Shown: positions 587 to 64,000 of the stretch, one piece after another
Layout of the letters: the number at the start of each line of letters is the position of its first letter
How positions within the stretch are numbered: position 1 is the stretch's first letter
IMG/VR virus record: IMGVR_UViG_3300027573_000779
Span: 62,001-126,000 of that record
Reading direction: 5' to 3' (one strand)
Length of the DNA stretch: 64,000 nucleotides
Notes under the pieces: generated by a model
Told to the model about the DNA's origin: nothing
The model's input: only the letters and a program-made list of their open reading frames with translations
Database searches by the model: none
Position numbers and translations under genes: made by a program

Positions 587-996
587 GGCTTTTTAATGTT
601 AAAGGAAAACTAGTCTATTTAAATGTTAAAAAGTATTTGATAGATTGGGACTCTGCCAGCAGGTCAAAACTGCAAACCAGAGTTAAAAAGTTCCTTAAAC
701 CGTTTTGGGAAAAACACTTATGTTATGAAGAGTTTCCCGTATATGGCAGTAGATTAAAAGTGGATTTTCTTAATGCTACTAAACGTATAGCCGTAGAGGT
801 TCAGGGCGTTCAACATGATAACTTTAATGAGTTCTTTCATAAAAACCGGCTTAATTATTTTTTTTCAATTAAGCGCGATGTTAAGAAACTTAACTGGTTG
901 GAAACGAACAAATTTAAAGTTTTAGAATTTACAGAGGAAGACGTTGAACAATTAACTTATGATTTTGTTTTGCAGAAGTTTGAAATTTATTTATGA
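583..996 (+). CDS. Vsr/DUF559-like PD-(D/E)XK endonuclease
   Basis: EEFPV...LKVDFL...IAVEVQGVQH motif; ATGA overlap with upstream gene. Confidence 0.7.
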   Translation: MRLFNVKGKLVYLNVKKYLIDWDSASRSKLQTRVKKFLKPFWEKHLCYEEFPVYGSRLKVDFLNATKRIAVEVQGVQHDNFNEFFHKNRLNYFFSIKRDVKKLNWLETNKFKVLEFTEEDVEQLTYDFVLQKFEIYL

Positions 997-12921: not shown

Positions 12922-14096
12922 TGAATTTAATCGAGCGATACGCATTATCTTGTGGAGTTAAAATTGGAGAACCTTACATCTTCGAAAAGTTTTTCCCTTT
13001 ATCTATTGACAAGTATATAACTTTACATACAACCAGCAAAGAGGCCAAAAACTATGACTATTTTCAAGAAGTAGTTGATATTCTTTTCCCGATTTTAGAT
13101 AAGGAGAAAATTGGAATTATTCAACTTGGCACTCCCGAAGACAAGCCTATTTTTGGCGCTTATCGCCTCTGTGGTCAAACCGACATCAACCAAGCCGCAT
13201 ATGTTGTGAAACACGGTTTACTCCATATGGGTGTTGATAGCTTTCCTGTTCATATTGCTGGTCACTATAATAAACCCATTGTTGCCCTTTATTCAACAAA
13301 TTGGGCCGCTAACGTTTGTCCTTATTGGGGTGAAAAAGAAAAACAGACGCTTTTTGAGCCAGACCGAAGCAAACGAAAGCCTTCATTTTCAAACGTTGAA
13401 AGACCAAAGACAATCAACGAAATAAAACCCGAAGATATTGCGGAAGCAGTTTGTAAACATTTAAATCTTCCGTTTGATTATCCTTATAAGACTGTTTATG
13501 CTGGCGAAGGATTCGGAACGGCGAACGTTGAATGTATTTTGAATCAAGTAATAAATCCCGCCCAGTTTAATCTTTCCAATATAATTGTCAGGCTGGATTT
13601 GGAATTTAATCAAGAACCCCTTCCCGCCCAATTGTCACAAAGTCAATGTGTTTTGGTTACCAAACAACCTATTGAGCCGGGAATTCTTCAAACTTTTAAA
13701 CCTAATATTTTGGAAATAAACTATGAAATTACCAAACATGGTTCGCCAGACTTTATAAAGTTTGTAAGACAGTTGGGTATTAAGTATAATTTGTTTTCTT
13801 ATTTGGATGAAGAAGAACTTAATAAACAAAAAAGTTACTTCATGGATTTTGGAGTCATTTTTAAGCAAGATGTAGGTCGCCCGAAAGAGCTTGACAAAAT
13901 TCCCACATCTGAGTTATTCTATAAATCAACGAAGTTCACCCTGAGCAAGGGCAAGATTTATCCAAGCTATTATGCAGTTTTAAATGATTTACCCATAGAA
14001 GGAATTGGAAACCATGTGGCCACAATTCCAAACGAGAACCATTTAAACGAGCTTTGGAAAGAAAGCAGGCATTTGAGATTTTTTGTTAAGAAATAA
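12921..14096 (+). CDS. GT9 (heptosyltransferase-like) C-terminal-domain protein
   Basis: IIQLG, LCGQTDINQAAYVV, GVDSFPVHIA, PIVALY. Confidence 0.75.
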   Translation: MNLIERYALSCGVKIGEPYIFEKFFPLSIDKYITLHTTSKEAKNYDYFQEVVDILFPILDKEKIGIIQLGTPEDKPIFGAYRLCGQTDINQAAYVVKHGLLHMGVDSFPVHIAGHYNKPIVALYSTNWAANVCPYWGEKEKQTLFEPDRSKRKPSFSNVERPKTINEIKPEDIAEAVCKHLNLPFDYPYKTVYAGEGFGTANVECILNQVINPAQFNLSNIIVRLDLEFNQEPLPAQLSQSQCVLVTKQPIEPGILQTFKPNILEINYEITKHGSPDFIKFVRQLGIKYNLFSYLDEEELNKQKSYFMDFGVIFKQDVGRPKELDKIPTSELFYKSTKFTLSKGKIYPSYYAVLNDLPIEGIGNHVATIPNENHLNELWKESRHLRFFVKK

Positions 14097-43446: not shown

Positions 43447-46400
43447 ATGTCAACCAGATTATATTTAAATTGGAACGAATCGGGGTATAATGCATCCCTA
43501 AGTAAATATTACTCTGGATGGCAATCCGGCTCAAGTAGATTTTCAGTATATGGTTTGGTGCAAAAAGAAGGTATTACAGACAGATATGCTCCCAATCATT
43601 TAGACTTTCCTATAACTACCGGATTTATTCCGTTTGCTATGTCGAAAGCTCTCTCCGAACCCTTAGTTTCGGGAGTTTATAATACTGGATTGTTTTCTGG
43701 AATATCTACTTATTTATGTGGAAAAACCGGGACTTTTGCTATTCAGGTTGGTATTTATAATTTCGATGGGAGTCAGTTAAAAAGCGAAATTTTTCCTGTA
43801 ACAACCGGAAGAAACATAGTTATAACAGATTCTGTTCAAGGAAAATATCTTACAGATATTTTCCCAAACACAGGTTTGCATTCTGGTTTTACGGCAGATA
43901 GAGGAGATAGACTTGGAATAGTCTATGGTTTTTATAATAGAACTAATAGTACTAGTAATTTTCATTTTGAATCAGCCGCAACTACAAACATTGGAGATTT
44001 TTCATTTAGCGAAACCCCCGCAGAAGTATTCGATTTACCACAGTTAGGTACTTTTAAAAATCCTTGGATTGAATTTTCTAATAATTTTCAATTTGTTAAA
44101 ATAAAAAACATACAAGGAAAAGCGGCTATTAGCAGAGGAGCTAGGGATATAAGAGGAACTGCTAGAATTGCTACTCCTCCTTATTATTATGAAAATACCA
44201 CTCCGATAATATTGCCATATTACGGAGGAGGTTCGACCTATCCTTCAACAATTAATGTCACTGGTTTGGATTCAAGTAAAACTTCAGTGACCGTTTGGAT
44301 TAATGGATTTGCTTATACTAATCCTAGAAACGTAGAAATATTGTTGGTTTCTCCTAGTGGAAGAAATATTGTTTTGATGGGTGACAATTCACCGTCAACA
44401 ACTTCAGTTAGCGGTTTAAATTTAACTTTTAACCAAAGTTCTCCTCATATAATGGGAGCTAGTAAGAGGTTATCTGGCGTATCTTATCTCCCTACACTTA
44501 ATAATGAGTCTCGATTTTTCCCTCCTGCTTATTCTGGTATTATTGACAATACAATAGCTAATTCAAATTTGAATGTTGTTTCTGGAGACGACCCCAATGG
44601 AACTTGGTCGTTGTATGTTCTAACCCAAGACGCAAGAATTGGAGGAATTAAATCTTGGGGGCTTTCTTTTGCTAACAATGCAGCTCAAGTTGCTCATTTT
44701 TCATTAAGTGGAAGTTTTGGCCCATTAACCGTTCCAGAAACACAAAGCGGCAGAGCAAGAATTAAAGTTACTAGAACTCCAACTACAAATTGGATGTATA
44801 GTATAAAGACAGGAGGGGGCGACCCTGAAATTACTGATTTTGTTTCTGGATATTCATTCGGAGAAGCTATTTTAAAATCAACGGGAACTTATGAATATAT
44901 CTATCCATATGCTATTGTAGGAGACTTTCTCCAATCTTTTAGTGGTGTTGGTGGCAATAGAAATCATATAGAATTTTACTTTTCTGACCCAGAATGGGGG
45001 TCAGCGGTTTATTTAAGGAACGAACAACCCATTTTCCCCACTAACGATGGTCTGTTTTGGAGCAATGGTAATCAAGCCTACGAAATAACAGCGGGAGCAT
45101 TACACAATTCTGGTATTTGGGAATTACAACGACTTCTTTTTCCGGCGCAAATTGGTTTAGCTAAAATTATCAAATTAAACGTTAATAACCAAACCGCAGT
45201 TGCTAGGATTTTTAATACGGTTAGATGGTCTATTAACGGTGTAGCGCGAATTGCTGGCGCGGGAGCACAATCTTACGACCAATTAGGCAAAGCTAGAATA
45301 AGCACTACCACACAAAGAACTCAAACTGGTTTAGCGCGAATTTTAACCACCAGCCAAAGAACACAAACCGGCATTGCTCGAATTCTTAATACCAGCCGTT
45401 GGTCTCAAACCTGCATTTCTAGAATTAAGGTTACTACAACTCAAACTCAAAGTTGTAGGGCTAGAATTCAGGTTACAACTCGCAATAGTCAAACAGGTCT
45501 TGCTAGAATTAAGGCTACAAGTTCTCGCGTTCAAACAGGGTTGGCACGAATTTTAAACACTACACGAAATACCCAAACCGGTTTATCTAGGATTAAAACT
45601 ACAAGTAATTGGAGCCAAACTTGTAAAGGTAGAATTAAAGTTTCTACTTCCAATATTCAAACTGGCGTTGCTAGAATCAGAGTTTCAACAAATAGAACTC
45701 AAACCGCTTTAGCTAGGATTTTAAATACAAGCAGAACAAGTCAAACTGGTCGCGCAAGAATTCGGACAACAACACAGAATAGCCAAACTGGGGTTGCGAG
45801 GATTAAAGCCGCAACCAGTCGCTCTCAAACCGGTTTAGCAAGAATTTTAAATACTTCTAGATTTACTCAAACTGGCGTTGCTAGGATTAAAAATACAATT
45901 TCATGGACCCATACTGGCGTTGCTTACATTGCTGCTCTTGGAAGTCAGATTAGAGTTCAACTTGGTAAAGCTCGCATACTTAATACTGTTAGATATAGTC
46001 AAACTGGCAAGGCTAATATTAAACATATTAGGAGCTACACGCAAACTGGTATTGCTAGAATTCGCTGCACAATAAATAGAACTAATTCTGGTTTGGCGCG
46101 AATCAAAGCTTCAATATCTCAAAGTCAACTTTGCGTTGCTAGAATTAAGACTACAAGTTCTTTTAGCTGCCAAGGCAAGGCAAGAATTCAAAGAGCTTCT
46201 CAATGGACCGTTAACGGCCTAGCTAGGGTTAAAGTAACCGACAATAATTCTCAAACTGGCGTTGCAAGAATCAAGGCTACAACTCAGAATTCTACTCAAG
46301 GTAAAGGAAGAGTTCTCCGCACAATTCAGCAATCTCAAACTGGTAAGGGTTATATTACTGTATCGGCGGCTTCGAACCGGACCCAAACAGGTATTGCTAG

Positions 46401-46911
46401 AATTCTAAGAAGTTCAACTCAAAATCAGCTTTGTGTTGCTAGGATTAAAACTACTCAAAATAACAATGTTAATTGTGTAGCCCGAATTAAAACTACAAGT
46501 AGTAGAATAATTACTTGTATTTCAAGAATCTCTAAGTCTAGCACCCAAAATCAAACCGGTGTTGCTAGAATCAGAACTAGCACCAGAAATAGTATTTCTT
46601 GCTTAGCTAGAATCAAAACCACTACTTTAAACTCAACAACAGGTAAAGGTAGGATTCAAACTACTTCTAGACATAGCAATACTGGATTAGCAAAAATTAG
46701 AGTTTTAAAGACCCAAACTCTTACGGGTATAGCTAGAATTTTCGGAACTCAAAGAAGAACGACAACCGGTTTAGCTTTTATATTCCCTTATAGTATTACA
46801 GAATTACCTAAAAAGGAAATTATTGCTACTATTTTGGGTCAAAAAGTGACGGGTCCTCAAGGTGTCAGAATTGGACTAATTATCAAGGAGGTTATTGTTA
46901 GGGTTCCATAG
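43447..46911 (+). CDS. Fibre-like protein with proprotein-convertase P-domain and QTGxARI repeats
   Basis: YPSTINVTG...ILLVSPSG...NGTWSLYV...IKSWGLSF (P-domain); roughly 40 repeats. Confidence 0.7.
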   Translation: MSTRLYLNWNESGYNASLSKYYSGWQSGSSRFSVYGLVQKEGITDRYAPNHLDFPITTGFIPFAMSKALSEPLVSGVYNTGLFSGISTYLCGKTGTFAIQVGIYNFDGSQLKSEIFPVTTGRNIVITDSVQGKYLTDIFPNTGLHSGFTADRGDRLGIVYGFYNRTNSTSNFHFESAATTNIGDFSFSETPAEVFDLPQLGTFKNPWIEFSNNFQFVKIKNIQGKAAISRGARDIRGTARIATPPYYYENTTPIILPYYGGGSTYPSTINVTGLDSSKTSVTVWINGFAYTNPRNVEILLVSPSGRNIVLMGDNSPSTTSVSGLNLTFNQSSPHIMGASKRLSGVSYLPTLNNESRFFPPAYSGIIDNTIANSNLNVVSGDDPNGTWSLYVLTQDARIGGIKSWGLSFANNAAQVAHFSLSGSFGPLTVPETQSGRARIKVTRTPTTNWMYSIKTGGGDPEITDFVSGYSFGEAILKSTGTYEYIYPYAIVGDFLQSFSGVGGNRNHIEFYFSDPEWGSAVYLRNEQPIFPTNDGLFWSNGNQAYEITAGALHNSGIWELQRLLFPAQIGLAKIIKLNVNNQTAVARIFNTVRWSINGVARIAGAGAQSYDQLGKARISTTTQRTQTGLARILTTSQRTQTGIARILNTSRWSQTCISRIKVTTTQTQSCRARIQVTTRNSQTGLARIKATSSRVQTGLARILNTTRNTQTGLSRIKTTSNWSQTCKGRIKVSTSNIQTGVARIRVSTNRTQTALARILNTSRTSQTGRARIRTTTQNSQTGVARIKAATSRSQTGLARILNTSRFTQTGVARIKNTISWTHTGVAYIAALGSQIRVQLGKARILNTVRYSQTGKANIKHIRSYTQTGIARIRCTINRTNSGLARIKASISQSQLCVARIKTTSSFSCQGKARIQRASQWTVNGLARVKVTDNNSQTGVARIKATTQNSTQGKGRVLRTIQQSQTGKGYITVSAASNRTQTGIARILRSSTQNQLCVARIKTTQNNNVNCVARIKTTSSRIITCISRISKSSTQNQTGVARIRTSTRNSISCLARIKTTTLNSTTGKGRIQTTSRHSNTGLAKIRVLKTQTLTGIARIFGTQRRTTTGLAFIFPYSITELPKKEIIATILGQKVTGPQGVRIGLIIKEVIVRVP
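45148..46783 (+). repeat. Coding tandem repeat, 42-nt / 14-aa period
   Basis: For example QTGLARILTTSQRT QTGIARILNTSRWS QTCISRIKVTTTQT. Confidence 0.9.
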
Positions 46912-52204: not shown

Positions 52205-53221
52205 GTGAATAAACTAGATGAAATTAAACATAAAATTGCTCTTGCTGATATTTTAGTAGGTTATTCCACAGTAATATTTAATAATCAAACCATCTATATC
52301 AAACATTTTACCTTTCAAGAACACCTAAAAGTTGAACAAGAATATGAAACAAGCTTTGAAATAGCTGTTAAAAAGGGCGTTCCAACCATTGAAGACAAAA
52401 TAAAAGAACTTATTAAAGAAAAAGAGTGGACCGACGAAGAAGAAAAACAGTTCCAAAAACTTCCTCAAGATATAGGTATTTTAAAAGATACCAAGAAAAA
52501 ATTCTTCTTGGAAAAAGACGTGGAAAGAATTGATAAAAATATTAAGGCTGAAGAGGAGAAATTGCAAAAATTGGAGACTAAAAGAAACAGCCTATTAGGT
52601 TACACCGCAGAAACTTACGCAACAAAAAAAACTAACGAACTGTTTGTTTTTCATACCTTTAGAAATCAATTAGAACTAGATAAAACTTTATATTCTTGGG
52701 AAGAGTTTAATGAGTTGGATGAAAGTCAAATGGGCGATTTAATTAATCTTTTTAATAAAGATTGCGTTAGATTTGCCCCTCAAGAGATGAAAAAAACAGC
52801 TATTTTAAACTCTCACATGCAAATGATTTATTTGGCGGGAGAAGATTTGTGGAACTTTTATGGTAAGCCGGTAGTTCAATTTACCGCCCGTCAAAGCGAG
52901 CTTTATAGCCTAGGACGTTATTTTAAAGGACTTATTTCGGACTTAAAAGATAAGGTCACTAGCGATGTTTTAGACGACCCGGATAAACTAATTCAATATG
53001 TAGACTCTCAAAAAGCCGCTGAAACCCTTGGAACCGCCAAAATTCCTGAAGGAAAAGAATCAATTGGAGGAGGAACGGCTATTGTGGGAGCTTCCACTGA
53101 AGATTTAAAGAAATTAGGCTTAGATAAAGAAAAGGGCGCTGATAGTTTGGCTGAAGAAGCTGGAAAGAAAGGCGGCTCTTTAAATATGGAAGATTTATTA
53201 AAATTACACGGTTTGGTGTAA
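52205..53221 (+). CDS. Putative tail assembly chaperone (gpT-like)
   Basis: Directly before tape measure; FYGKPVVQFT..Q..L and DDPDKL motifs. Confidence 0.55.
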   Translation: MNKLDEIKHKIALADILVGYSTVIFNNQTIYIKHFTFQEHLKVEQEYETSFEIAVKKGVPTIEDKIKELIKEKEWTDEEEKQFQKLPQDIGILKDTKKKFFLEKDVERIDKNIKAEEEKLQKLETKRNSLLGYTAETYATKKTNELFVFHTFRNQLELDKTLYSWEEFNELDESQMGDLINLFNKDCVRFAPQEMKKTAILNSHMQMIYLAGEDLWNFYGKPVVQFTARQSELYSLGRYFKGLISDLKDKVTSDVLDDPDKLIQYVDSQKAAETLGTAKIPEGKESIGGGTAIVGASTEDLKKLGLDKEKGADSLAEEAGKKGGSLNMEDLLKLHGLV

Positions 53222-53241
53222 TATTATAAGAAGGATTAAGG
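53216..53241 (+). promoter_or_regulatory. GTGTAA motif and ribosome-binding site of tape measure gene
   Basis: GTGTAATATTATAAGAAGGATTAAGG immediately before ATG 53243. Confidence 0.6.
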
Positions 53242-53242
53242 T

Positions 53243-56200
53243 ATGGCCAATGATGGAGTAAGAGTACCTGTAGTACTAGAGTGGAATCAAGCGATTCAAG
53301 ACTCTATAGCACAGGCACGAAGAATCCCGCCAGTTAACGTTAGAGTTAATACTGGCCGGATTGGAGATGGTTTTAAACACGCGTCTAAAGAGGCCGAACA
53401 GTTTGAACGAGCCTTAGCTAGCGCCCAAACCCGCGTTTTAACCCTCGGGGCGTCTTTCGGCGCTCTGTTCGCAATTCAAAGAGGCTTTAAAGCCTTAATC
53501 CAAACAACCATTGATGTTGAAAAGCAGCTTAAAGACATTAATGTTATTTTGGGAGTAAGCACAAGCAGTCTTAGCACCTTTTCTGAGCAACTGTTTGGTA
53601 TAGCTAAAAATACCGGCCAAAGCTTTGAAACAGTAGCTAAAGCCGCCTTGGAATTTAGCCGCCAAGGTCTTGGAGTTCAAGAAACTTTAAAAAGAACCAA
53701 TGACGCCCTTATTTTAACCCGCCAAACTGGATTAGATGCCGCTGAAGCAACCGACGCTATCACTGCCGCTATTAACAGCTTTAGTCAAGCTGCTCTGACT
53801 TCAAGCGATATTGTTAATAAGTTTGCTAAGGTTGACCAAAACTTTGCAGTTAGTTCCGCTGACTTAGCAGAAGCTATTAAACGGGTGGGTTCTAGCGCTG
53901 AAGAAGCGGGAGTAGGAATTGATGAACTTATTGCTTTAGTTACCTCTGCCCAACAAATAACTCAACGTGGCGGTGCTGTAATTGGTAACGCTTTTAAGAC
54001 TATTTTTACTCGTACAGCCAGACCCCAAGTGCTTAATGACCTTGAACAACTTGGAATTACTGTCAGAAACGCTCAAGGAGATATTCTCCCGGCTGTTCAA
54101 ATCCTCACAAATTTGGCGAACAGTTATGATAATTTAAGTCAGGCCCAACAATCTGCCGCCGCTGAACTTGTAGGGTCTGTTTATCAAATTAACATTTTAA
54201 AAGCTTCTTTAAAAGATTTGGGTAAAGAACACTCGTTTTACTCTAAGGCTCTCAATGACTCTTCAACCGCAACTGACGAAGCTGTTCAACGTAACGAAGC
54301 TTTAAATACAACTCTAGCGGCTTTAATTAATAGAACTAAAGAAAACGTAAGGCAGTTTTCGGCTAATGTGGGACAGGACACTTTTGGCCCTTCAATTCGA
54401 AGAGTTGCTGGTCTTGCTAATGGTTTCTTGGAAAATGCTAATAACATTTTAGGTGCCGATAAAGCTGAAGTGGCTTTTAAAGAAATTGGTTCAGTTCTTG
54501 GAAAAGGACTGGTTAGGGGTTTTGGACAGTTCTTACAAGGTCCGGGTTTGGCGCTGATTGGTGTTGCACTGTTTAAATTTGCCAGTCAGTTCGCAAGGCT
54601 GGCAACAGAAGCTTATAAACTTTTGACTGACCTTAACAAAAGCACTGACCAAAGGGCCGCTATTGAGTCTCGCGTTTTAGGCGTTTTAAGACAAGAGCCT
54701 AATATTTATAGCCAAATACTAGGAAATAGTTTAAGTGTTGTTCAGGCACAAGAAAAGGTTCTTCAAATTATAACGGCACAAAATGCAGCCTTAAACGCCC
54801 AAAAAGCAATAGCTTCACAACTAACATCCACCCTCATTAATACTGGCGCAGTAGGAGTCAATCCTAAGACTAGGGAAGTGGTGACCAATCCAGCTTTAAA
54901 AAAAACACGCTCAGAAGGTAGCATTCCGAACTTTGCGGTAAATATTTTGGACGCTCAAAAGGAAATTGAAGGCGCTTATAAAGCTAAATACATTCCCGGC
55001 CAAGTGCGCCAAGTGGGAGACGCAGTAATTAATAATGCAGAAAGTATTAAAACTAGCGCCGCACACCCCCAAGAAAAAGCTATAGTGCCGCCTCAAGGCA
55101 GCGAAGCGGGACAAAAATACAAAGAAGCTTATCGAACTATTTATGGTAAAAGCCCTTATGGGGATGCAATTACCAAGGGGAGAAACGCTTTTCAGGTTCA
55201 GTGGATGAAGTCAATCGGCGCTAAAAGAGGGTTGGATTTAACTAATCCAGATAATATTTTAGTGCTTGCAAAACAGTTCAGAGAAACCTATGGGTCACAA
55301 CAGGGGCTGTTGCCATTTAATAAAGGAAAGGTGCCAAGTTTTGCCTCTAGTTTAACTTTATCAACTTCAAAAAACTTTGTTAAACTCGCAAAAGAAAGGG
55401 GTGTCAAAATTGTCAGAGAAGACCAGAGGGTTCCCCAAGGTAGTGCTTTTTATATTCGTTCTGGCGCAGAAGGAAAGAAAATAGTTCTTCCAAAAAAGAC
55501 TCCTATTGATGTTCTTGCTCATGAAGTAGGACACGACCTTTCATATGATTACTTAAATATATACTCTCCAAGACTTTTAAAAGAACAATCAGCTAACATC
55601 GAAGCCTTAAAAAGAATTCCCACAGAAAAAGAAAGACAGGGATATCGTGAAACACTAAGTCCTGCAACTAAAACATATAAAATTGGAATATTAAGAGGTA
55701 TTTTGAAGGATTTTGCTCCTAATATAGACGACGAAAGTATTTTTATTAATGAACTCAGAAAGCAGGAAGGCAAACATTCTGATAGATATTCCCCCGTAAT
55801 AAGAGCGCACAGTACCGCTTTGCGTGCTTTGATAAAAGATATAGGACCAAAAAAAGTAAAAGAGATATTGTCACAATTGCCCGAAATAGACAAAACCGAT
55901 TTAAAAAGAAAACCTTACGCTTCGGGGCACGTTCCAAACTTCAACCTCTTCAGTAAGGTTTCTACTGAAGACGAAGCTAACCGAATGGTTAAAGTCTCTT
56001 CGGTTAACGCGCTGAAGCCTTATTTGAAGAAATCAGAAGGTGATGTGCCAAATTTTGCCTCAGGGCGCGTCCCGAACTTTGCTTCTAGTTTATCTCTTTC
56101 AACTAGTAAAAAACTATTAAGGGAAGCTAAAAAAACAGGAATAAAAACACTAAGAACCAACGAACCAATACCTTATTATGATATTCCTTCGAGTTCGGTT

Positions 56201-59200
56201 CGCGCTCCAAAAGGAACTTCTTTTGATGTTATTGCGCACGAACTTGGTCACGGATTTTCTTATCAGGAAAACCCCCTTCTGGAAAGAGTGCGTTCAGATA
56301 TAAAATCAGAAGTGGGCGCTAATACTGAAATTTTAAACAGATTATCAGGAAAAGAAAAGAAATCATTTGCTAAACAAATGCTTAATCCTTTTAAAACCTA
56401 CAAGATAACATCTTTAGTTGATTCTTTAAGAGGACTGGTTCCCCTACCTGAGATGGTCAAAATCATTGGACAACACAGAATAAGAACCAAAGATTTAGGA
56501 AAAAGAGCCGGGGATTTAGGTAATTATAGTGATTTTAGAAAATCTCAATCACAAGTTCTAAGAGACATTGTTAAGACAGTGGGACCACAAAAAGTTAAAG
56601 AGCGCATTTCGAATCTTTCACCGGTTAATAAACAAGACTTAAAGGCGCGTTATTTTGCTTCAGGGCGAGTGCCCAACCTTGCCAAAAGTTCCTACTCTTT
56701 GGTTCATAGTACAACTCCACAGTTGGCTAAGACAATAGAGTCAGAGGGCCTTAAACCTAGAAGAAAAGAGGGCTTTGAAAAGGGGTATTTTTCGCAACAT
56801 GTTACTAACTTTGAGAAACTTGCTGAAGAAGTCAGAGCAAGCGAGTTTCCTGATTTGCCTAGTAGACTAAACTCGGTTTATTTAACTCCAGAAAGTCGAA
56901 AATTTAATAGGTTTGGAACGCATTTTAAAGTTGCCCCAAATAAAGAAAGCTATATTTTCAACTTAAAAAAGATAGATAAAGCTTTTGATTTAGCGGGTCC
57001 TTATGGGACGAGCACTGTTCCAAATACTAAATTACGCGAACTTGCTCGTGAATATTTCCAATCCGGCATTCCTTTAAATAGACAAAATCTAAATAAAGTT
57101 TTAGAAAAAGAGAAAGAAAATACGGGTTATGACTATGGAGACAATCCTTTTTTTGAAATCCTGACGCCGGGACCAGTTTCAGCTAAAAAAATAAAAAGGC
57201 TTAACTCAAAAGGCGCGGTTCCAAACTTTAATATTGATGTTAATGGTATTTTTTCACAACTTCCTGAGCGTGAACGCGTTGTAATAGAAGAACACGCCGA
57301 TGGATTAAAATTGGGCGAAATTGCAAAGAAATATAATATTTCAAGAAATAAAGCAAGCTCTATTTTCAATCGCGGACGTAATAGTTTTATAAAGCAATAC
57401 GGTTTGGCTAAAAAGGGTTTTGGAGAGTTCGCGGCACAAGGTAAAATCCCAAACTTTGCTAAAATCTACAAACTTCGCACTGGATTTCCTGAACATATTT
57501 TAAAACAAATTCAATCATTACATGGTAAACAATTACGAATATTTCCGACTAAGGACCACTTTCCTAAAGAGTTGCGAAACGATATTATAAAGTATGGAGA
57601 AAACAATATTCCCAAGTTTGACCCAAACTTAATAATCGACAGTAATGAAATTATTGAAGTTGAACACGATGATAATATTCGAGGACTTCATGGAACCAAT
57701 ATTGAGAAAATTGTAGTAAAGAAAACAACGCCTTATTTAGACCAACATCTGGCAATTGCCAAAGATGGCGGTATTAAGAGTATTTGGCACACTTTAAATC
57801 CAGACAGGTTTAATAAACCACAAAATCCTAGAAATAGAATTTATAGTCAGGGCCAAGTGCCGAATTTTGCTTCTTCATTTTCTAATATCAGTTTAGCAAA
57901 AGCTCCACATAATTCTACTGCGATAAGAAGACTGGGAATACCAAAAACCGGCAGTTATGCTTCCTATTACTTTGACAGGAATAAACACATAAACATAAGT
58001 TTCATTGAATCTAACCAAAAAGGGGACGCTTTTAGGTTATTTAAAGCTTTGGGGCGCACCGCCCGTAGAATTAAGCGTCCAATTATAAGTGAAACTCTAG
58101 TCAAATCGTCCAAACAACCTGACGAAAACCAAACTAATTGGGAACAACTTTTAGTAAGATATCCTCAATTACGCTACCGGGACTTACCAAACGCTTCAAC
58201 CAATGGGGTTTTTCGGCCAAATCTTCTAGGAAGTGAAGAACGAAGCTTTAACACCTTTGAAGAACTAAAAACTATAGTAAACCAAGTTCCTTCAGATATT
58301 TTCAAAAAAAACCTTAGAACAGGATTCACAAGTGTCGGCAACCTCTCCACTACTTTTAAAAACAAAGGGCAAGCGCCAAATTTTGCTTACATTCCATTCA
58401 TTTCTCCTCTTGTCGGGCGCGTGGTGACTAATTTGGTGCATTCTGGCGAAGGTTTTAGTATGGCGGCTTTAAAACCTGCTTTTAATTTTGCTAAGGAAAA
58501 GGGCATAAAACAAACGATTAAAAATATTATTTTAGACAAACCGGCGCACCAAGGAACTTTTTTTGGTTTTAACGAAGAAGGAAGAGAAGACTTCGGCTTG
58601 TCCGAATTTGGTTTTCGAAAAATGTTTGGTTTGGAACCTAGAATTCCACCAAATCCAGAAGTTAAACTCCGTCAAATTCCGGGCAAGAAAAACACCTATG
58701 CAATAGGTGGAAGAAATCCACTACAAAATTTTGGAGTTAATCTAACAACAAAAACTCCTCAAAATGTTAGATATCGCCCTCAAGACCCAAATACAATTAG
58801 AAGTTTGTTTAGGAGTCCAGATTTCGGAGCTTTTAACCTAGATGCCAACACCAAAAACAGAAAAATTCGCTATTCTGACACTTGGGATTTTGCACTCCAT
58901 GGGAGCGAAAAGTTGAATTTTAAGGAATTAAAAGACGAACTAAAAAGACGTTTTATTAGACAGCCCGAACTTGAATCTATCAAAGATGAATTTAAATTAA
59001 ACGTTCTTCCAAAAGTTTTAAAACAAAACCCTTTAAAAACAATTAAGGATATTAAAGAACTTTTTCCCAAAAACAGACTTAAGAGTGTTTTGAATCCTGC
59101 GAATCTTGTTTTCCAAGGTAATGCGGGAGCCAGTCTTTTTACTAATGAGCCGGTTCATTCTTATGGTAGTTCACAGTTAACAAAACTGTTTAGGAAGCTA

Positions 59201-62200
59201 GTAAACAGTGTCTCGTCACCAGCAACATTCGTAGGCCAAGTTACAAATCCCGATGACAAAAAACTTCTTTTTGATAGTCTTACTGACCTTGCAAATAGCG
59301 ATATAGACCTTCAAAAAACCAAAGCTACGCCTGCCGCCAAATTTTTAGGTACAAAATATAAACAAAACAAATTAAAAGAATCATTTATAACACTTCAGGA
59401 TAGATTGTATAATAGATTCAATTTTAATCCTTCTTCAAAACGTGATTTTAGTAATCGCAAGGACGCTTTTCCAATTGGCAAGCCGGGAATCAACATTTTT
59501 TCGGCTATAGAAAAATATGGTAGAGCCAAAGGTGAAGTGCCAAATTTTGCTTCCTCTTTGCCTTTATCAACCGCCAAAGAATTATTAGCTCTAGCCAAAG
59601 AAAGAAAGATTCGCATTACTAGAGATAAAGAACTTGGAGCTTTTCATAGATTTTCAGAAAGAAGAATTAATCTTCCTAAAGGCGAATCAATTGAAACTTT
59701 CGCGCATGAATTGGGTCACAGTTTATCTACCGATAATTTTTATAAATTTGCTAATGCAAATCGGATAGAAAGAGAAGTAATGGCTAATCAAGAGATTGTC
59801 CAACGACTGGTTGACCCAAAAGAACAAGAAACATTTAAAACAAACACTCTTGAATCTTTTAAATCTTATAAAAGCGGAATAATACTAGAACGGGTTTGGC
59901 CACAATTGCAAATTCCAGAAGAAAAACGCAATCAATATATTGAAATTCAACAAAAAGAATTTAAAAAAACTCAGAGAAGTAAAGGTATAAGTCCAGAGCA
60001 TCGAAGTAGCGCTGCTGTATTACGAAAACTTGTTAAAGATTTTGGGCCAAAAACCATAAAACAACTTATTAGTTCCACTCCCCGCGACGAGAGGGAAGCT
60101 TTAAAACTGCGCTATTCTTTTGGAAAAATCCCTAGTTTTGCCGTAATGAGTCCGCAGGAAAAAGCCTTTAAAGATATCGCTTTAAGACTAAATTCAGAAA
60201 AACATATAGGATATGGCCCACAAAAATATTTTTTACCATTTTTGTCTGATAAAACCGTAAATCCCTATCAATCATTATATTATAGCACCCCATACGAACA
60301 ACAACAAACAAAAAAAGAAGAAGTTGAAAAGAAACTAATAAATTTTATTCCCGAAGGTAAAAATTTCCTAAGACCATATAACAATATTCTACAGCAAGCC
60401 CCCGCTGTTAAAGATGCTTACAGGTTTGTAAGAAACCTTTTTGGTGATTTTGCTGGTCGTGGTTCTGGCGACCCTCTTGAGCGTTCTGCAAACAACTATT
60501 TGAAGATAATGCGTGGTTTACAAAAAACCGGTGTTTTTAAAGAAATAAACAAACTGTCGCCGCAACAATTATTAAGAGGAGGGATAAAATCAGGTAATCT
60601 TTCTCTATACGGTTTTGGGGGAGACCCCCTTCCTGAATCAAAATTCAAAACAAGAGCTTTGGAGTCTGGCAATCGCGACCTTGTGGCTAACGACCCATTA
60701 TATTCGTTTCATCAAAGGTTTGAAAGTAAAAAAGAAGAATTAAAACTAAGAAAACAGTTTAAAGCTTTTACAAGCTCCTTTGTAAACTCTGTTTCTAAAT
60801 TCAGGAACATTCCAAGAATAAAAAATAAACTTGAAGAAATAACTGGCGGTGACCATACAAGACTAGCCCTAACTGCAAAAAAATATATTCCGCCTGAAAT
60901 TTATGAACGTTTAGCTTACCTAAGCAAAACCTTTGTAAATACAAAACGGCAGGCTTATAATCTTGGTGTAGACATTGATTCTCCATTTTACTTTCGTGGA
61001 CAAAGTAGAAGCGAAGCGGCAATTTTAGACAAACTTAAAGAATTTACCTCTTTGGGATTTGCAAGTCAGACAGATAGATTAGGCGTTACTTTAAATAATA
61101 ATCCATTGTTTGCTGCTGCTTTTGGCGTTACTTCCGGCAAAGAGTTTGGAAAACCGGGGTTATTGGGAATTTATAGAAAAAAACAAATCGACAGTAGAGA
61201 ACCAAGAAGGCTAGGAGAAAACATCTCTTCTGGCAGGCTTAGAATAGATGACCTGTTTGGTTTTATTGATTTGGCGGCTCAAAAATTTGTTCCAGCGTCT
61301 TCTCTAAGTAAAGTATATGGTCCAGAACACGCGCCCTCTTCTGAAATTCTGGAGAAAACCAAATCTTTGCTAAGTAAAGAAGATTACGACATAATAAAAT
61401 CTCAAAGTTTACATAAAGATTATAATCCAAACACACAATTAACTCTTACAAGAGGATTAGATGTTCGTAGAGGAAAGAAAATATCAGACTACCGTGGTCC
61501 AAGTCAAACTAACCCCAATCTTGGCGAACTTTCTTTTAAAGAGTTGCTTGACTATCTAAAACACTCAATAGATACTACCCAACCGGGAGTTATTCCAACA
61601 GGTGGGCCAGAAAGTTCTTTTGCAAATGTCAGTTCTGACGCTATTTTAGTTAAAAACCGAAAAACCGCTAAAGAATTAGAAAATAAACCCGTTCAAAAAG
61701 AGGGACAGGCGCATTTCCAAAGGCTGGTCAGTCAATCAGAATTATTCGGATACGACAGACTACAAAACCTTTTTGATAACCCAAATCTTTCAACAGAAAG
61801 AAAAAACAAACTGTTGAGAAGCGGAATCGTTGTTAATCTTCCTGAAATTAGAGGGCAAATTGGATATAGAACGGCAGCACCCGAACGCGAATACCCAATT
61901 TTAACATCAACCCCAAAAACTTCTGGACCTGTAAATATTGGCAGATTATTTGCTGTTTCGCCTTATATATTCAAAAAATCAGGTTATTCAAAAGGAAAGT
62001 TGCCAAACTTTGCAAAAGCTCCGCAATTTTCTCAACTTCAATTAAAAGAAATTTTGGGCGGCTCAACTGAAGCTAGAAAAGCTGTTTTCCAAGACAGTCA
62101 ATTTGTTTTAAAATACGGAAAATCTTCTGGTCACGCTATAAATGAATTTGTTTCAAATAGATTATTTAATGCTTTTGGCGAAAACGTGCCCGAAGCTCAA

Positions 62201-64000
62201 TTAATTGACACTCCTCAAGGTAAAGCCTTTCTGTCTAAATTCATCCAAAGTCAATCTTTTGGAGAACTGTATGATAAAGGAGATATTAATACAAGACAAA
62301 GATTAATTCAAGGAGTTAAACCTTCTTTTGCGGCTCATGCGGCCTTTGCTAATTGGGACGCATTTGGCGATTGGAATCCAGCAGGAGCCAATGTAAGACT
62401 AGATTCAAATAATAGACAGTTTTTTGTGGACTTGGGTGGGGCTTTAGCTTATAGAGGTTTGGGCGCACCTAAACCCAATTTTGGTCCAGAAGTGCCCGAA
62501 CTGCGTTCTCTTATTGATTATGCATCTAATCCTTATGCTAAAGCCGCTTTTAAATTTCAACCAGAAGAGCTAAAATCTAATGTTGCCGATTTTCTAAAAA
62601 GAACTCCGTCAAATTTAAGCGGTTTGTTAGAGTCTTTAAATAGTGAAACCCAAGGGGACCCACATATCACTAAAGCACTAAAACAAATTCCTAATCGTTT
62701 AAATTATCTTAGAAACTTTATTAAATCCAAAGGTTCTATCCCAAATTTCGCGTTCTTTTCAGGAATAGCTTCTGTCGCGCAATCACTTACAGGAGCTAAA
62801 AAACTTCCAAAACAAAACATTCGTGCTAACATTACTCCCGAAGAAATGGAGGCAATCTATTTTAATTACGCTAAAACCATTTATAATCCTCAAAAAGGAA
62901 AAATCCCAGTAGGTTTAAATTATTTTGCGAACAAGGCTTTCAATTCCGCGATGTTTGAACATCAAGGCTCTTATGTTTTTGGTTCTCACGATAACGAGTT
63001 GTTCCTTCCAACTCACTTTGCTCCAAAAAGCTTAAAGGGCGGATTTGCGGCGCAAAAAGCATTAAGTGAATATTCTAATGTAATGTATGCCGTAACTCAG
63101 GAAATGACCCCAATGCTAGAAAGACTTGGGTTCAGTGTGGCTAAATCTGGAGTTAAAGTTCCCTTCAGGGGCGGAACTGCATTAAAAGACTTTTTGGTTT
63201 CTGATAAACTGCGAACCCCAATGTTTCTTACCAATTTCCTTTCTCAAATGAAACAGGGAGCGGGTTCTAAATACGTTAAACAATATTTAACAAGAGAAGA
63301 CCAAGCTAAATTTAGTCATTATTATCCTTATGGTGGGGGAACTCCGGGCGAAGATGAAGCTATTGAATACTTAAGAAACAGAGGAATTACAGCTAATCAG
63401 GGCAAAATTCCTTCGTCTAATGCGTATTTAAAAGCTAAGTTAACGCACGTCCCCAATTTTGCTCTTCTTGACTCTCTTAGGAGTTTAATTGATGTTCAAA
63501 ACAATAAGTTTTTGGGTTCGAAATTACCCAATACACTTGGAGAAATTTACCCTGTTATAAGGGACCAATTTCCTAAAATAGGACCAATCTTAAAGGGAAT
63601 TAACCCTAGATTACTACTAGATGATATTAATGTTGATAGTGGGACATTATATCGAGGTTTTGCTAGAGCTGTGCGCTCAAAAACATATGACGGTCCTTTT
63701 AGAGCATATGACAGTCCTATTAAACCCTCCGAAACCGTCACAGGTGAACTTGACTTTTTATATAACTTTACGCACGCTTTAAATAGAGGCCAACCGTTAA
63801 AATTCCAAAAAGCCTCGCTAGAAGCCCTGTTCCAAATTGGCGCTCAAGCAAAACAAGAAGGGATAACTGATAAAGTAGGTATCAATACAAATAGCGACCC
63901 ATTTTTTAGAAACCTCGGAAACCCGCAACAACATAGAGATTTTGCACGAAACTTTTTAAATTTAGATAAATCAAAACCCAATCAATCCTTTATTCAAAAA
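53243..64000 (+). CDS. Giant tape measure protein fused to an array of enzyme-like modules (3' truncated; absent from ORF track)
   Basis: Hand translation from ATG 53243 shows no stop in 3586 codons. First ~560 aa are TP901-type tape measure (AALEFSRQG, NFAVSSADLAEAIKRVGS, GAVIGNAFKTIFTR); the rest is modules separated by GxVPNFA linkers. Confidence 0.93.
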   Translation, partial: MANDGVRVPVVLEWNQAIQDSIAQARRIPPVNVRVNTGRIGDGFKHASKEAEQFERALASAQTRVLTLGASFGALFAIQRGFKALIQTTIDVEKQLKDINVILGVSTSSLSTFSEQLFGIAKNTGQSFETVAKAALEFSRQGLGVQETLKRTNDALILTRQTGLDAAEATDAITAAINSFSQAALTSSDIVNKFAKVDQNFAVSSADLAEAIKRVGSSAEEAGVGIDELIALVTSAQQITQRGGAVIGNAFKTIFTRTARPQVLNDLEQLGITVRNAQGDILPAVQILTNLANSYDNLSQAQQSAAAELVGSVYQINILKASLKDLGKEHSFYSKALNDSSTATDEAVQRNEALNTTLAALINRTKENVRQFSANVGQDTFGPSIRRVAGLANGFLENANNILGADKAEVAFKEIGSVLGKGLVRGFGQFLQGPGLALIGVALFKFASQFARLATEAYKLLTDLNKSTDQRAAIESRVLGVLRQEPNIYSQILGNSLSVVQAQEKVLQIITAQNAALNAQKAIASQLTSTLINTGAVGVNPKTREVVTNPALKKTRSEGSIPNFAVNILDAQKEIEGAYKAKYIPGQVRQVGDAVINNAESIKTSAAHPQEKAIVPPQGSEAGQKYKEAYRTIYGKSPYGDAITKGRNAFQVQWMKSIGAKRGLDLTNPDNILVLAKQFRETYGSQQGLLPFNKGKVPSFASSLTLSTSKNFVKLAKERGVKIVREDQRVPQGSAFYIRSGAEGKKIVLPKKTPIDVLAHEVGHDLSYDYLNIYSPRLLKEQSANIEALKRIPTEKERQGYRETLSPATKTYKIGILRGILKDFAPNIDDESIFINELRKQEGKHSDRYSPVIRAHSTALRALIKDIGPKKVKEILSQLPEIDKTDLKRKPYASGHVPNFNLFSKVSTEDEANRMVKVSSVNALKPYLKKSEGDVPNFASGRVPNFASSLSLSTSKKLLREAKKTGIKTLRTNEPIPYYDIPSSSVRAPKGTSFDVIAHELGHGFSYQENPLLERVRSDIKSEVGANTEILNRLSGKEKKSFAKQMLNPFKTYKITSLVDSLRGLVPLPEMVKIIGQHRIRTKDLGKRAGDLGNYSDFRKSQSQVLRDIVKTVGPQKVKERISNLSPVNKQDLKARYFASGRVPNLAKSSYSLVHSTTPQLAKTIESEGLKPRRKEGFEKGYFSQHVTNFEKLAEEVRASEFPDLPSRLNSVYLTPESRKFNRFGTHFKVAPNKESYIFNLKKIDKAFDLAGPYGTSTVPNTKLRELAREYFQSGIPLNRQNLNKVLEKEKENTGYDYGDNPFFEILTPGPVSAKKIKRLNSKGAVPNFNIDVNGIFSQLPERERVVIEEHADGLKLGEIAKKYNISRNKASSIFNRGRNSFIKQYGLAKKGFGEFAAQGKIPNFAKIYKLRTGFPEHILKQIQSLHGKQLRIFPTKDHFPKELRNDIIKYGENNIPKFDPNLIIDSNEIIEVEHDDNIRGLHGTNIEKIVVKKTTPYLDQHLAIAKDGGIKSIWHTLNPDRFNKPQNPRNRIYSQGQVPNFASSFSNISLAKAPHNSTAIRRLGIPKTGSYASYYFDRNKHINISFIESNQKGDAFRLFKALGRTARRIKRPIISETLVKSSKQPDENQTNWEQLLVRYPQLRYRDLPNASTNGVFRPNLLGSEERSFNTFEELKTIVNQVPSDIFKKNLRTGFTSVGNLSTTFKNKGQAPNFAYIPFISPLVGRVVTNLVHSGEGFSMAALKPAFNFAKEKGIKQTIKNIILDKPAHQGTFFGFNEEGREDFGLSEFGFRKMFGLEPRIPPNPEVKLRQIPGKKNTYAIGGRNPLQNFGVNLTTKTPQNVRYRPQDPNTIRSLFRSPDFGAFNLDANTKNRKIRYSDTWDFALHGSEKLNFKELKDELKRRFIRQPELESIKDEFKLNVLPKVLKQNPLKTIKDIKELFPKNRLKSVLNPANLVFQGNAGASLFTNEPVHSYGSSQLTKLFRKLVNSVSSPATFVGQVTNPDDKKLLFDSLTDLANSDIDLQKTKATPAAKFLGTKYKQNKLKESFITLQDRLYNRFNFNPSSKRDFSNRKDAFPIGKPGINIFSAIEKYGRAKGEVPNFASSLPLSTAKELLALAKERKIRITRDKELGAFHRFSERRINLPKGESIETFAHELGHSLSTDNFYKFANANRIEREVMANQEIVQRLVDPKEQETFKTNTLESFKSYKSGIILERVWPQLQIPEEKRNQYIEIQQKEFKKTQRSKGISPEHRSSAAVLRKLVKDFGPKTIKQLISSTPRDEREALKLRYSFGKIPSFAVMSPQEKAFKDIALRLNSEKHIGYGPQKYFLPFLSDKTVNPYQSLYYSTPYEQQQTKKEEVEKKLINFIPEGKNFLRPYNNILQQAPAVKDAYRFVRNLFGDFAGRGSGDPLERSANNYLKIMRGLQKTGVFKEINKLSPQQLLRGGIKSGNLSLYGFGGDPLPESKFKTRALESGNRDLVANDPLYSFHQRFESKKEELKLRKQFKAFTSSFVNSVSKFRNIPRIKNKLEEITGGDHTRLALTAKKYIPPEIYERLAYLSKTFVNTKRQAYNLGVDIDSPFYFRGQSRSEAAILDKLKEFTSLGFASQTDRLGVTLNNNPLFAAAFGVTSGKEFGKPGLLGIYRKKQIDSREPRRLGENISSGRLRIDDLFGFIDLAAQKFVPASSLSKVYGPEHAPSSEILEKTKSLLSKEDYDIIKSQSLHKDYNPNTQLTLTRGLDVRRGKKISDYRGPSQTNPNLGELSFKELLDYLKHSIDTTQPGVIPTGGPESSFANVSSDAILVKNRKTAKELENKPVQKEGQAHFQRLVSQSELFGYDRLQNLFDNPNLSTERKNKLLRSGIVVNLPEIRGQIGYRTAAPEREYPILTSTPKTSGPVNIGRLFAVSPYIFKKSGYSKGKLPNFAKAPQFSQLQLKEILGGSTEARKAVFQDSQFVLKYGKSSGHAINEFVSNRLFNAFGENVPEAQLIDTPQGKAFLSKFIQSQSFGELYDKGDINTRQRLIQGVKPSFAAHAAFANWDAFGDWNPAGANVRLDSNNRQFFVDLGGALAYRGLGAPKPNFGPEVPELRSLIDYASNPYAKAAFKFQPEELKSNVADFLKRTPSNLSGLLESLNSETQGDPHITKALKQIPNRLNYLRNFIKSKGSIPNFAFFSGIASVAQSLTGAKKLPKQNIRANITPEEMEAIYFNYAKTIYNPQKGKIPVGLNYFANKAFNSAMFEHQGSYVFGSHDNELFLPTHFAPKSLKGGFAAQKALSEYSNVMYAVTQEMTPMLERLGFSVAKSGVKVPFRGGTALKDFLVSDKLRTPMFLTNFLSQMKQGAGSKYVKQYLTREDQAKFSHYYPYGGGTPGEDEAIEYLRNRGITANQGKIPSSNAYLKAKLTHVPNFALLDSLRSLIDVQNNKFLGSKLPNTLGEIYPVIRDQFPKIGPILKGINPRLLLDDINVDSGTLYRGFARAVRSKTYDGPFRAYDSPIKPSETVTGELDFLYNFTHALNRGQPLKFQKASLEALFQIGAQAKQEGITDKVGINTNSDPFFRNLGNPQQHRDFARNFLNLDKSKPNQSFIQK
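54917..63463 (+). repeat. Dispersed in-frame linker repeat G-x-[VILA]-P-[NS]-[FL]-[AN]
   Basis: Copies start at 54917, 55325, 55925, 56039, 56063, 56663, 57212, 57440, 57851, 58367, 59531, 60122, 61994, 62732 and 63443 (THVPNFA), with a degenerate copy at 63401. Confidence 0.92.

What the first reader, a model, noticed from the sequence alone, without database searches (positions are those of the whole stretch)
55346..60121. Three paralogous zincin metallopeptidase modules inside the tape measure
Seen: modules 55346-55924, 56084-56662 and 59552-60121 all start SSLxLSTxK. They contain AHEVGH (55520), AHELGH (56237) and AHELGH (59705), a downstream ExxAN, and end LRx[LI][IV]KxxGPxxxK. Linker-to-linker spacing is 600, 600 and 591 nt. 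Established: HExxH followed by ExxAN is the ImmA/IrrE-like zincin signature, and those enzymes cleave specific regulators. Inference: the whole linker-bounded unit was duplicated and diverged, showing the module is the unit of evolution. They may process the polyprotein or cut different host targets.
Basis: partly seen in the sequence, partly recalled or inferred. Interest (0 to 1): 0.8.

Follow-up and report, generated by a model that had tools for sequence, protein, structure and literature searches.

The report
Zincin protease cassettes in giant tape-measure
A 5,468-residue phage tail tape measure protein carries three diverged copies of a small zinc protease distantly related to ImmA/IrrE repressor-cutting enzymes. 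They sit among about sixteen interchangeable cargo units, separated by a short conserved peptide that recurs about 1,000 times across more than a hundred related giant tape measures.

Summary
Window 55346-55924, 56084-56662 and 59552-60121 encode three true paralogues (33-35% identity, E 1e-23 to 3e-27). Each keeps HExGH, a Glu 21-24 residues after the first His, and an invariant Ala-Asn. They lie in one open frame starting at 53243, a 5,468-aa tape measure protein (TMP) that runs past the window end.

With 15 family members, AlphaFold gives a confident zincin core (pLDDT 88.5). Profile comparison links the catalytic two-helix core specifically to ImmA/IrrE proteases (hhalign 94.6%, against 5-18% for controls). 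The Pfam M78 model is never matched, so this is a separate and very rare family: 12 true hits among 1.84 billion representatives.

The main new result concerns the linker [A/S]-x-G-[F/Y/L]-[V/I]-P-N-F-A. It is common to a large uncultured clade of giant TMPs, with 976 copies in 120 proteins against about 12 expected. Of the 114 linker-rich TMPs, 85 have no HExxH at all.

The zincins are therefore optional cargo cassettes, not the general linker-processing enzyme. I favour injected site-specific proteases with three specificities. Self-processing remains possible in this lineage. Whether the copies arose by duplication in place is unresolved.

The parts
53243..64000 (+). Tape measure protein gene. 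It is open to the window end; the full product is P0001, 5,468 aa, continuing about 5.6 kb beyond the window.
   Evidence: Only open frame. PF10145 PhageMin_Tail at aa 121-307, E 1.8e-26. PHROG tape-measure families down to 3e-46. Full length.
55325..55345 (+). Linker GKVPSFA (aa 695-701), immediately before zincin module 1
   Evidence: family consensus
55346..55924 (+). Zincin module 1 (aa 702-894): HEVGH at aa 760-764 (nt 55520), Glu781, Ala784-Asn785
   Evidence: AlphaFold model of this module has pLDDT 88.5 and pTM 0.81.
55925..56083 (+). Linker GHVPNFN, a 31-aa mini-segment, then a double linker GDVPNFA-S-GRVPNFA, between modules 1 and 2
56084..56662 (+). Zincin module 2 (aa 948-1140): HELGH at aa 999-1003 (nt 56237), Glu1023, Ala1026-Asn1027
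56663..56683 (+). Linker GRVPNLA (aa 1141-1147), after module 2
59531..59551 (+). Linker GEVPNFA (aa 2097-2103), before module 3
59552..60121 (+). Zincin module 3 (aa 2104-2293): HELGH at aa 2155-2159 (nt 59705), Glu2178, Ala2181-Asn2182
   Evidence: The best PHROG 87 stretch lies at aa 2117-2196.
60122..60142 (+). Linker GKIPSFA (aa 2294-2300), after module 3
54917..62752 (+). The in-window span of the cargo region: 14 copies of G-x-[VILA]-P-[NS]-[FL]-[AN] between nt 54917 and 62752, delimiting cassettes of about 30-620 aa. Further copies follow beyond this span and beyond the window.
   Evidence: Synonymous codons differ among the copies, so it is the peptide that is conserved.

Best explanation
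The three segments are diverged paralogous copies of a roughly 190-aa gluzincin domain found so far almost only in phages. Its fold is an N-terminal helix, a three-stranded sheet, an HExGH helix and a Glu-x-x-Ala-Asn helix, followed by a helical C-terminal subdomain. The catalytic core is a remote relative of the ImmA/IrrE (M78, PHROG 87) site-specific proteases. The copies are three of about sixteen linker-delimited cargo cassettes inserted between the N-terminal and C-terminal parts of a 5,468-aa tape measure protein of an uncultured phage (contig of 209 kb or more). This TMP belongs to a large clade of giant 'polyvalent' tape measures whose cassettes are separated by the peptide [A/S]-x-G-[F/Y/L]-[V/I]-P-N-F-A. 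Shown: paralogy, the zincin fold at model level, retention of all catalytic residues, the ImmA-like remote homology, the cassette architecture, and the independence of the linker from zincin modules. Inferred: all three are active endopeptidases that leave the virion with the tape measure at infection. Like ImmA/IrrE they would cut a few specific proteins, such as host or resident-prophage regulators or defence components, and the three copies would give three specificities. Cutting of the polyprotein itself is a secondary possibility for this lineage only.
For: Paralogy. Family-wide invariant H, E, G, H, then E, A, N, plus a Tyr and a Gly, across 15 sequences at 18-36% identity; this argues for retained catalysis. 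The AlphaFold model built on the 15-sequence alignment has pLDDT 88.5 and pTM 0.81 and shows the canonical zincin order of elements. ImmA link: PHROG 87 hits, phi105 ORF2 hitting PHROG 87 at 2.8e-32, hhalign 94.6% and E 7e-8 to eight ImmA/DUF955 proteins against 17.7% and 5.3% for controls; the best BFVD structural matches include proteins named IrrE or IrrE N-terminal-like, E 3e-3 to 8e-3. Cargo status: the module is 1 of 470 cassette clusters and occurs in 7 of 123 giant TMPs. Relatives carry ART-PolyVal, GNAT, ParB, glucosaminidase, kinase-like and pesticin Pfam domains. Linker independence: 976 linkers against 12.3 expected, and 85 of 114 linker-rich TMPs lack any HExxH. Precedents: polyvalent proteins carry 1-5 interspersed zincin domains (PMC5512222), and a TMP-fused enzyme acts inside the host in phage P23-45 (PMC10770324). 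Stand-alone homologues exist in other phage contigs, so the domain works without a polyprotein.
Against: No substrate, activity or virion proteomics is available. No Foldseek match to solved structures is significant (best E 0.2). The Pfam M78 model is not matched. ImmA/IrrE proteases normally sit next to their XRE-type substrate gene, which is not the case here. Whether folded 190-aa domains can travel in or through a tail tube is unknown. Having three copies in one protein, unusual in this clade, would also fit a processing role at many sites.
Confidence: 0.5

Rival explanations
1. The three zincins are the polyprotein's own processing enzymes. After ejection, or during tail assembly, they cut the G-x-V-P-N-F-A linkers, for example with Phe at P1', and release the other cassettes.
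For: Iyer et al. predicted autoprocessing for zincin domains interspersed in polyvalent proteins. Each module is flanked directly by linkers. Three copies are spread along the cargo region. A hydrophobic P1' residue suits gluzincins (general knowledge, not tested here).
Against: The linker is conserved in 114 of 120 related TMPs, and 85 of these have no HExxH. Only 7 of 123 carry this module. Stand-alone homologues occur in phage contigs that are not known to carry such polyproteins. Linker residue +1 differs between zincin-bearing TMPs with no matching pattern in the enzymes.
Confidence: 0.25
2. They are cell-wall (peptidoglycan) peptidases that help the tail tip cross the envelope, like the lytic domains known in other tape measure proteins.
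For: Lytic metallopeptidase domains are common in TMPs (and general knowledge). A relative carries a glucosaminidase domain, PF01832.
Against: There is no similarity to M23/M15 (LAS) or other muralytic families in Pfam, NCBIfam, PDB or Foldseek. The specific remote homology is to cytoplasmic ImmA-type proteases.
Confidence: 0.08
3. They are catalytically dead filler whose only role is to add length to the tape measure ruler.
For: TMP length sets tail length, and any sequence can add length (general knowledge).
Against: All metal-binding and catalytic residues are invariant across 15 sequences that have otherwise diverged to 18-36% identity. The domain also exists as a free protein.
Confidence: 0.04

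Closest known systems
Zincin-like metallopeptidase (MPTase) domains of phage and plasmid polyvalent proteins (Iyer, Burroughs, Anand, de Souza, Aravind 2017, PMC5512222)
   Same: Small HExxH plus downstream-Glu zincin domains, one to five per giant multidomain virion-delivered protein, interspersed among unrelated effector domains. They are predicted either to autoprocess the protein or to act on host proteins. Relatives of this TMP carry the ART-PolyVal Pfam domain.
   Different: Here the carrier is a tape measure protein; the paper's text has no occurrence of 'tape' or 'linker'. The cassettes are delimited by a strictly conserved peptide. The zincin is specifically ImmA-like. I could not test which, if any, of the paper's 12 MPTase clades it belongs to.
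ImmA/IrrE family metalloendopeptidases (Pfam PF06114 Peptidase_M78/DUF955, COG2856, PHROG 87), e.g. phage phi105 ORF2
   Same: HE-x-G-H, then a helix with E-x-x-A-N. Profile-profile probability is 94.6% over the two catalytic helices, with PHROG 87 hits. ImmA and IrrE cleave specific repressors (established knowledge: ImmR, DdrO).
   Different: No Pfam M78 hit for any of 15 members. Only 55 columns align. The His-to-Glu spacing is 21-24 residues against 28. The 'FA' after AN is replaced. The C-terminal helical subdomain differs. There is no adjacent XRE-type repressor gene. The domain is embedded in a structural protein rather than being a free lysogeny-module enzyme.
Thermus phage P23-45 gp96, a 5,002-aa tape measure fused to a virion RNA polymerase (PMC10770324)
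   Same: A giant TMP that carries an enzyme used inside the host at the start of infection. That paper also notes metallopeptidase and membrane domains in the TMP.
   Different: There is no detectable relationship between the two proteins. P23-45 carries one large enzyme at the N-terminus, not a train of linker-delimited cassettes.
Tape measure proteins with embedded lytic domains (e.g. T5 pb2, mycobacteriophage TMPs; general knowledge)
   Same: An enzymatic domain inside a TMP, delivered at the point of entry.
   Different: Those are peptidoglycan hydrolases. These modules show no similarity to them.

Membership tests
Zincin (gluzincin) metallopeptidase superfamily | HExxH motif on an alpha-helix | tested here: met
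   HE-x-G-H is invariant in 15 sequences and lies in helix 54-66 of the model.
Zincin (gluzincin) metallopeptidase superfamily | Third ligand Glu on the next helix | tested here: met
   Invariant Glu, 21-24 residues after the first His, lies in helix 76-90 of the model. This holds at the level of sequence and secondary structure only.
Zincin (gluzincin) metallopeptidase superfamily | Core fold: N-terminal helix, three-stranded sheet, two catalytic helices | tested here: met
   AlphaFold model, pLDDT 88.5: H5-17, E21-25, E35-37, E45-49, H54-66, H76-90. This matches the core described in PMC5512222.
Zincin (gluzincin) metallopeptidase superfamily | Zn coordination geometry and proteolytic activity | not testable with these tools
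No biochemistry is available.
ImmA/IrrE (Pfam PF06114 Peptidase_M78) | Match to the curated family model | tested here: not met
   PF06114 is absent at E up to 10 for the three modules and up to 1 for all 15 members.
ImmA/IrrE (Pfam PF06114 Peptidase_M78) | Remote homology of the catalytic core (HExxH ... E-x-x-A-N) | tested here: met
   hhalign A2 against A3: 94.6%, E 7e-8, 55 columns. Controls give 17.7% and 5.3%. PHROG 87 is hit by 5 of 15 members.
ImmA/IrrE (Pfam PF06114 Peptidase_M78) | Encoded next to its XRE-type HTH substrate or partner | tested here: not met
   The modules are internal to the TMP. Reference ImmA genes sit beside a transcriptional regulator; here they do not.
ImmA/IrrE (Pfam PF06114 Peptidase_M78) | Site-specific cleavage of a regulator | not testable with these tools
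   Needs biochemistry or degradomics.
Polyvalent proteins (Iyer et al. 2017) | Many unrelated domains in one virion- or conjugation-delivered polypeptide | tested here: met
   P0001 gives 17 segments when cut at linkers: the N-terminal TMP part, about 14 cargo cassettes and 2 C-terminal segments. They include an HTH like sigma-70 region 4 and a DUF2441-like unit. Relatives carry ART-PolyVal, GNAT, ParB and other domains.
Polyvalent proteins (Iyer et al. 2017) | One to five interspersed zincin MPTase domains | tested here: met
   Three copies at aa 702, 948 and 2104.
Polyvalent proteins (Iyer et al. 2017) | Delivery into the host with the DNA | not testable with these tools
   Inferred from TMP biology and the P23-45 precedent.
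Tail tape measure protein | TMP family domain and a long helical, Gly-rich hydrophobic C-terminal part | tested here: met
   PF10145 at 1.8e-26. PHROG TMP families at 3e-46 and, at the C-terminus, phrog_934. A Gly/Ala-rich hydrophobic stretch is visible in the sequence.

The most novel reading that the evidence does not exclude
The conserved peptide [A/S]-x-G-[F/Y/L]-[V/I]-P-N-F-A is a dedicated release or hand-off signal: a cleavage site for an unidentified protease, a self-cleaving Asn site, or a chaperone or tube docking peg. It would turn the tape measure of a whole uncultured phage clade into a modular 'cargo train' of independently evolving injected effectors. The three ImmA-like zincins would be injected anti-repressor-type weapons with different targets, such as regulators of host defence systems or of resident prophages.
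Probability: 0.3. Interest if true: 0.85.

Novelty: new variant of a known kind. Interest (0 to 1): 0.6.

Why it matters
Tape measure proteins are usually treated as rulers with at most one lytic domain. Here a whole clade of uncultured phages, with at least 285 proteins of 3,000-7,750 aa found by one search, uses the tape measure as a carrier for dozens of swappable units marked off by one invariant peptide. That gives a ready-made catalogue of candidate injected effectors with their domain boundaries already marked.

The three ImmA-like zincins are a concrete, testable case. If they cut host or prophage regulators on entry, that would be a new use of the anti-repressor protease family. If they cut the linkers, they would be the first defined processing enzyme of a polyvalent protein.

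The negative result also matters. It separates the linker question from the zincin question, so neither should be used to explain the other.

Tried and rejected
1. Nearest cultured relative. blastn and tblastn of the TMP N-terminus and of module 1 against 50,697 GenBank phage records gave nothing, or only 24-27% identity to generic TMPs.

2. Sequence search of module profiles against PDB gave only marginal HExxH-strand matches to serralysins.

3. Foldseek against PDB gave no significant match; the best E was 0.2, and IrrE 3dti ranked 20th at E 1.3.

4. AlphaFold with only the three paralogues was poor (pLDDT 62.5). It became confident only with the 15-sequence alignment.

5. A fourth module in P0001, and hits P0006, P0010 and P0015, were rejected as coiled-coil or repeat noise.

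6. In-place triplication was tested by tree and AU test and is unresolved.

7. Linker conservation as a result of recent DNA duplication or recombination was rejected, because the copies use different synonymous codons.

8. Identity of other cassettes (aa 1148-1323, 2301-2917, 2925-3163): no PDB sequence relatives. Pfam on the C-terminal 2,069 aa found nothing.

9. A neighbouring protease that might cut the linkers: Pfam and PHROG on the ten ORFs upstream of the TMP gave nothing useful.

10. A literature search for the linker peptide found no relevant paper.

11. ESM Atlas gave only sub-threshold leads: phage hypothetical proteins, and M78 at 0.85.
Full report
**What is there**

From ATG 53243 one + frame stays open to the end of the window. 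The other two + frames carry 239 and 403 stops over 53001-64000. The window is part of IMG/VR contig IMGVR_UViG_3300027573_000779, 208,933 bp. The frame continues beyond the window, and the complete product is 5,468 aa (P0001).

Residues 121-307 match PF10145 PhageMin_Tail at 1.8e-26. Residues 39-469 match PHROG tape-measure families down to 3e-46. The C-terminal third is helical with a Gly/Ala-rich hydrophobic stretch and a weak PHROG tape-measure match. The rest of the window is clearly phage: DnaB, Pol III alpha, a Phage-tail_3 protein and glycosyltransferases. So 'inside the tape measure' is correct.

**The observation**

They align over their full length at 33-35% identity, with E 8e-23, 3e-27 and 1e-24, and 39 invariant columns spread from the first to the last helix. 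Each follows a G-x-V-P-[NS]-F-A linker directly and is followed by another. Linker-to-linker distances are 200, 200 and 197 aa. HE-x-G-H, the downstream Glu-x-x-Ala-Asn and the LR...K..GP block are all present.

**What the module is**

Pfam gives only sub-threshold hits of the strand plus HExxH helix to reprolysin, M4, M13 and M91 models, and never to PF06114.

An exhaustive HMMER search of 1.84 billion cluster representatives with the three-copy profile found 15 proteins. Three are repeat noise. The true family is very small:
- five other giant tape measures, with one or two copies each;
- one fragment;
- five stand-alone phage proteins of 177-270 aa.

One stand-alone copy overlaps the start of a large-terminase gene. 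A seventh module-bearing giant protein (P0057) came from the later tape-measure search.

Across 15 sequences at 18-36% identity the invariant residues are H, E, G and H of the motif, then E, A and N, one Tyr and one Gly. With that alignment AlphaFold gives pLDDT 88.5 and pTM 0.81. The order of elements is helix, three strands, HExxH helix (54-66), Glu helix (76-90), then five more helices. That is the zincin core as described in PMC5512222. I could not read the model coordinates, so zinc geometry is not verified.

**Is it ImmA/IrrE-like?**

Foldseek against solved structures is not significant (best E 0.2). Against predicted viral structures, the best matches (E 2.5e-3 to 1e-2, TM 0.33-0.49) include a Bacillus phage 'peptidase' and proteins named IrrE or IrrE N-terminal-like.

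PHROG 87 'metallo-protease' is hit by 5 of 15 members (best 2.6e-5) and by the whole TMP at 4e-10. I checked what PHROG 87 is. The ImmA homologue of phage phi105 (ORF2, between integrase and repressor) hits it at 2.8e-32. Its relatives are annotated ImmA/IrrE family or DUF955.

A profile of eight such proteins (A3) matches the module profile at 94.6% probability, E 7e-8, over the two catalytic helices. As controls I used a second, unrelated HExxH cassette from the same tape-measure clade (A4). It gives 17.7% with the module family and 5.3% with ImmA.

The family is distinct from M78 as Pfam defines it, and it lacks the adjacent XRE partner gene typical of ImmA.

**The linker and the carrier family**

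Searching with the N-terminal 560 aa, restricted by the tool to proteins of comparable size, returned at least 285 proteins. The 120 listed are 3,023-7,751 aa and 39-54% identical to the query. No cultured relative is present in GenBank phages.

In those 120 proteins the pattern G-x-[VILAMT]-P-[NS]-[FYLWM] occurs 976 times, against 12.3 expected from shuffles. The consensus is [A/S]-x-G-[F/Y/L]-[V/I]-P-N-F-A, with G and P at 100%, N at 95% and F at 87%. The linkers lie mostly in the region between the N-terminal domain (first linker at median residue 547) and the C-terminal part, about 1,600 aa long at the median. Their median spacing is 177 aa and is irregular. In the window the copies use different synonymous codons, so selection acts on the peptide.

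Cutting 123 giant proteins at the linkers gives 1,234 segments in 470 clusters at 60% or more mutual coverage; 333 are singletons. Three units are conserved: the N-terminal domain, a first unit of about 80-130 aa, and a unit of about 71 aa just before the last linker. Everything between them is variable and reordered between proteins. Precomputed Pfam hits in relatives include ART-PolyVal, GNAT, ParB, glucosaminidase, AAA_33 and pesticin.

This is the polyvalent-protein idea of Iyer et al., grafted onto a tape measure and given explicit delimiters. No paper in the searchable library mentions the linker peptide.

**Consequence for mechanism**

- The zincin cassette occurs in 7 of 123 giant proteins.
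- 114 of the 120 have four or more linkers, and 85 of those have no HExxH anywhere.

So whatever the linker does, it does not in general need these enzymes. That weakens the 'they process the polyprotein' reading without excluding it for this phage.

The following points favour injected site-specific proteases:
- the catalytic residues are retained in all copies;
- free-standing homologues exist;
- the specific kinship is with repressor-cutting proteases;
- the modules sit among other putative take-over units, including an HTH like sigma-70 region 4 at aa 1338-1379;
- a TMP-fused enzyme acts inside the host in P23-45.

Three copies in one protein is unusual. Only 14 cases of any repeated cassette were found, and the zincin here is one of only two triple copies; the other is the conserved ~71-aa unit in P0034. 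This fits either three specificities or a dosage or processing need.

I put the effector reading at about 0.5, self-processing at about 0.25, a muralytic role at about 0.08 and inert filler at about 0.04.

**Origin of the three copies**

The two copies in P0003 are sisters (100/100), a clear tandem duplication. The three copies in P0001 fall in an unresolved polytomy with those of P0002, P0004 and P0005. Forcing them together costs 9.8 log-likelihood units, with AU p = 0.11. In-place duplication and separate acquisition by cassette exchange both remain open.

**Verdict**

The zincins themselves are a new, rare branch of a known kind: zincin domains of polyvalent proteins, ImmA-like. The more surprising result lies around them, in a clade-wide, peptide-delimited cargo system inside tape measure proteins whose delimiter has no assigned function.

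Noticed in passing
window 54917-62752 and onward; P0001 aa 559-3807; relatives P0002-P0132: A strictly conserved linker peptide, [A/S]-x-G-[F/Y/L]-[V/I]-P-N-F-A, occurs 976 times in 120 related giant tape measures against about 12 expected. It delimits shuffled cassettes. Its function (cleavage site, Asn self-cleavage, docking peg) is unknown, and it was not found in the literature.
   Followed up: partly
window 57254-57379 (P0001 aa 1338-1379, within the cassette at aa 1330-1399): A 70-aa cassette resembles sigma-70 region 4 or a LuxR-type HTH (Pfam 7e-4, below threshold; PHROG sigma-factor families at 3e-4). It could be an injected transcription take-over unit.
   Followed up: no
L001 19076-19291 (P0001 aa 3727-3798, beyond the window end): A conserved unit of about 71 aa (...NP-x-G-L-x-V-x-N-K-R-D-E-P-x-G...) sits just before the last linker in 77 of 123 giant tape measures, sometimes twice or three times. 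No family assignment.
   Followed up: no
window 54938-55324 (P0001 aa 565-694): The first cassette after the N-terminal domain is conserved in 83 of 123 relatives, unlike the variable cargo that follows.
   Followed up: no
P0060, P0064, P0065 and 11 others (alignment A4); P0016 aa 877: Other tape measures of the clade carry unrelated HExxH cassettes: an HELFH family in 14 proteins, and an HEMGH unit in P0016. Zincin-type cargo has therefore been recruited more than once.
   Followed up: partly
L004 10001-10570; L005 10001-10813: Stand-alone homologues of the zincin module (177-270 aa, ending ...K-K-P-W-x-x) lie in phage contigs on the packaging side. In L004 the gene overlaps the start of the large terminase gene.
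   Followed up: partly
window 55946-56083: Between zincin modules 1 and 2 there is a 31-aa mini-segment followed by two linkers only one residue apart (GDVPNFA-S-GRVPNFA). This may be a remnant of a deleted cassette.
   Followed up: no
window 62015-62731 (P0001 aa 2925-3163): By eye this cassette has a kinase-like pattern (H-A-A-F-A-N-W-D ... F-F-V-D-L-G-G). No Pfam or PDB sequence support was found, so it remains an unverified impression.
   Followed up: partly
window 993-2510, 7746-10361, 10951-14096, 23070-27035, 43447-46911: Phage context: DnaB-like helicase, Pol III alpha, two glycosyltransferase-like genes, a 1,321-aa Phage-tail_3 (host-specificity-like) protein about 26 kb upstream of the tape measure, and a 1,154-aa protein with a weak proprotein-convertase P-domain hit.
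   Followed up: no
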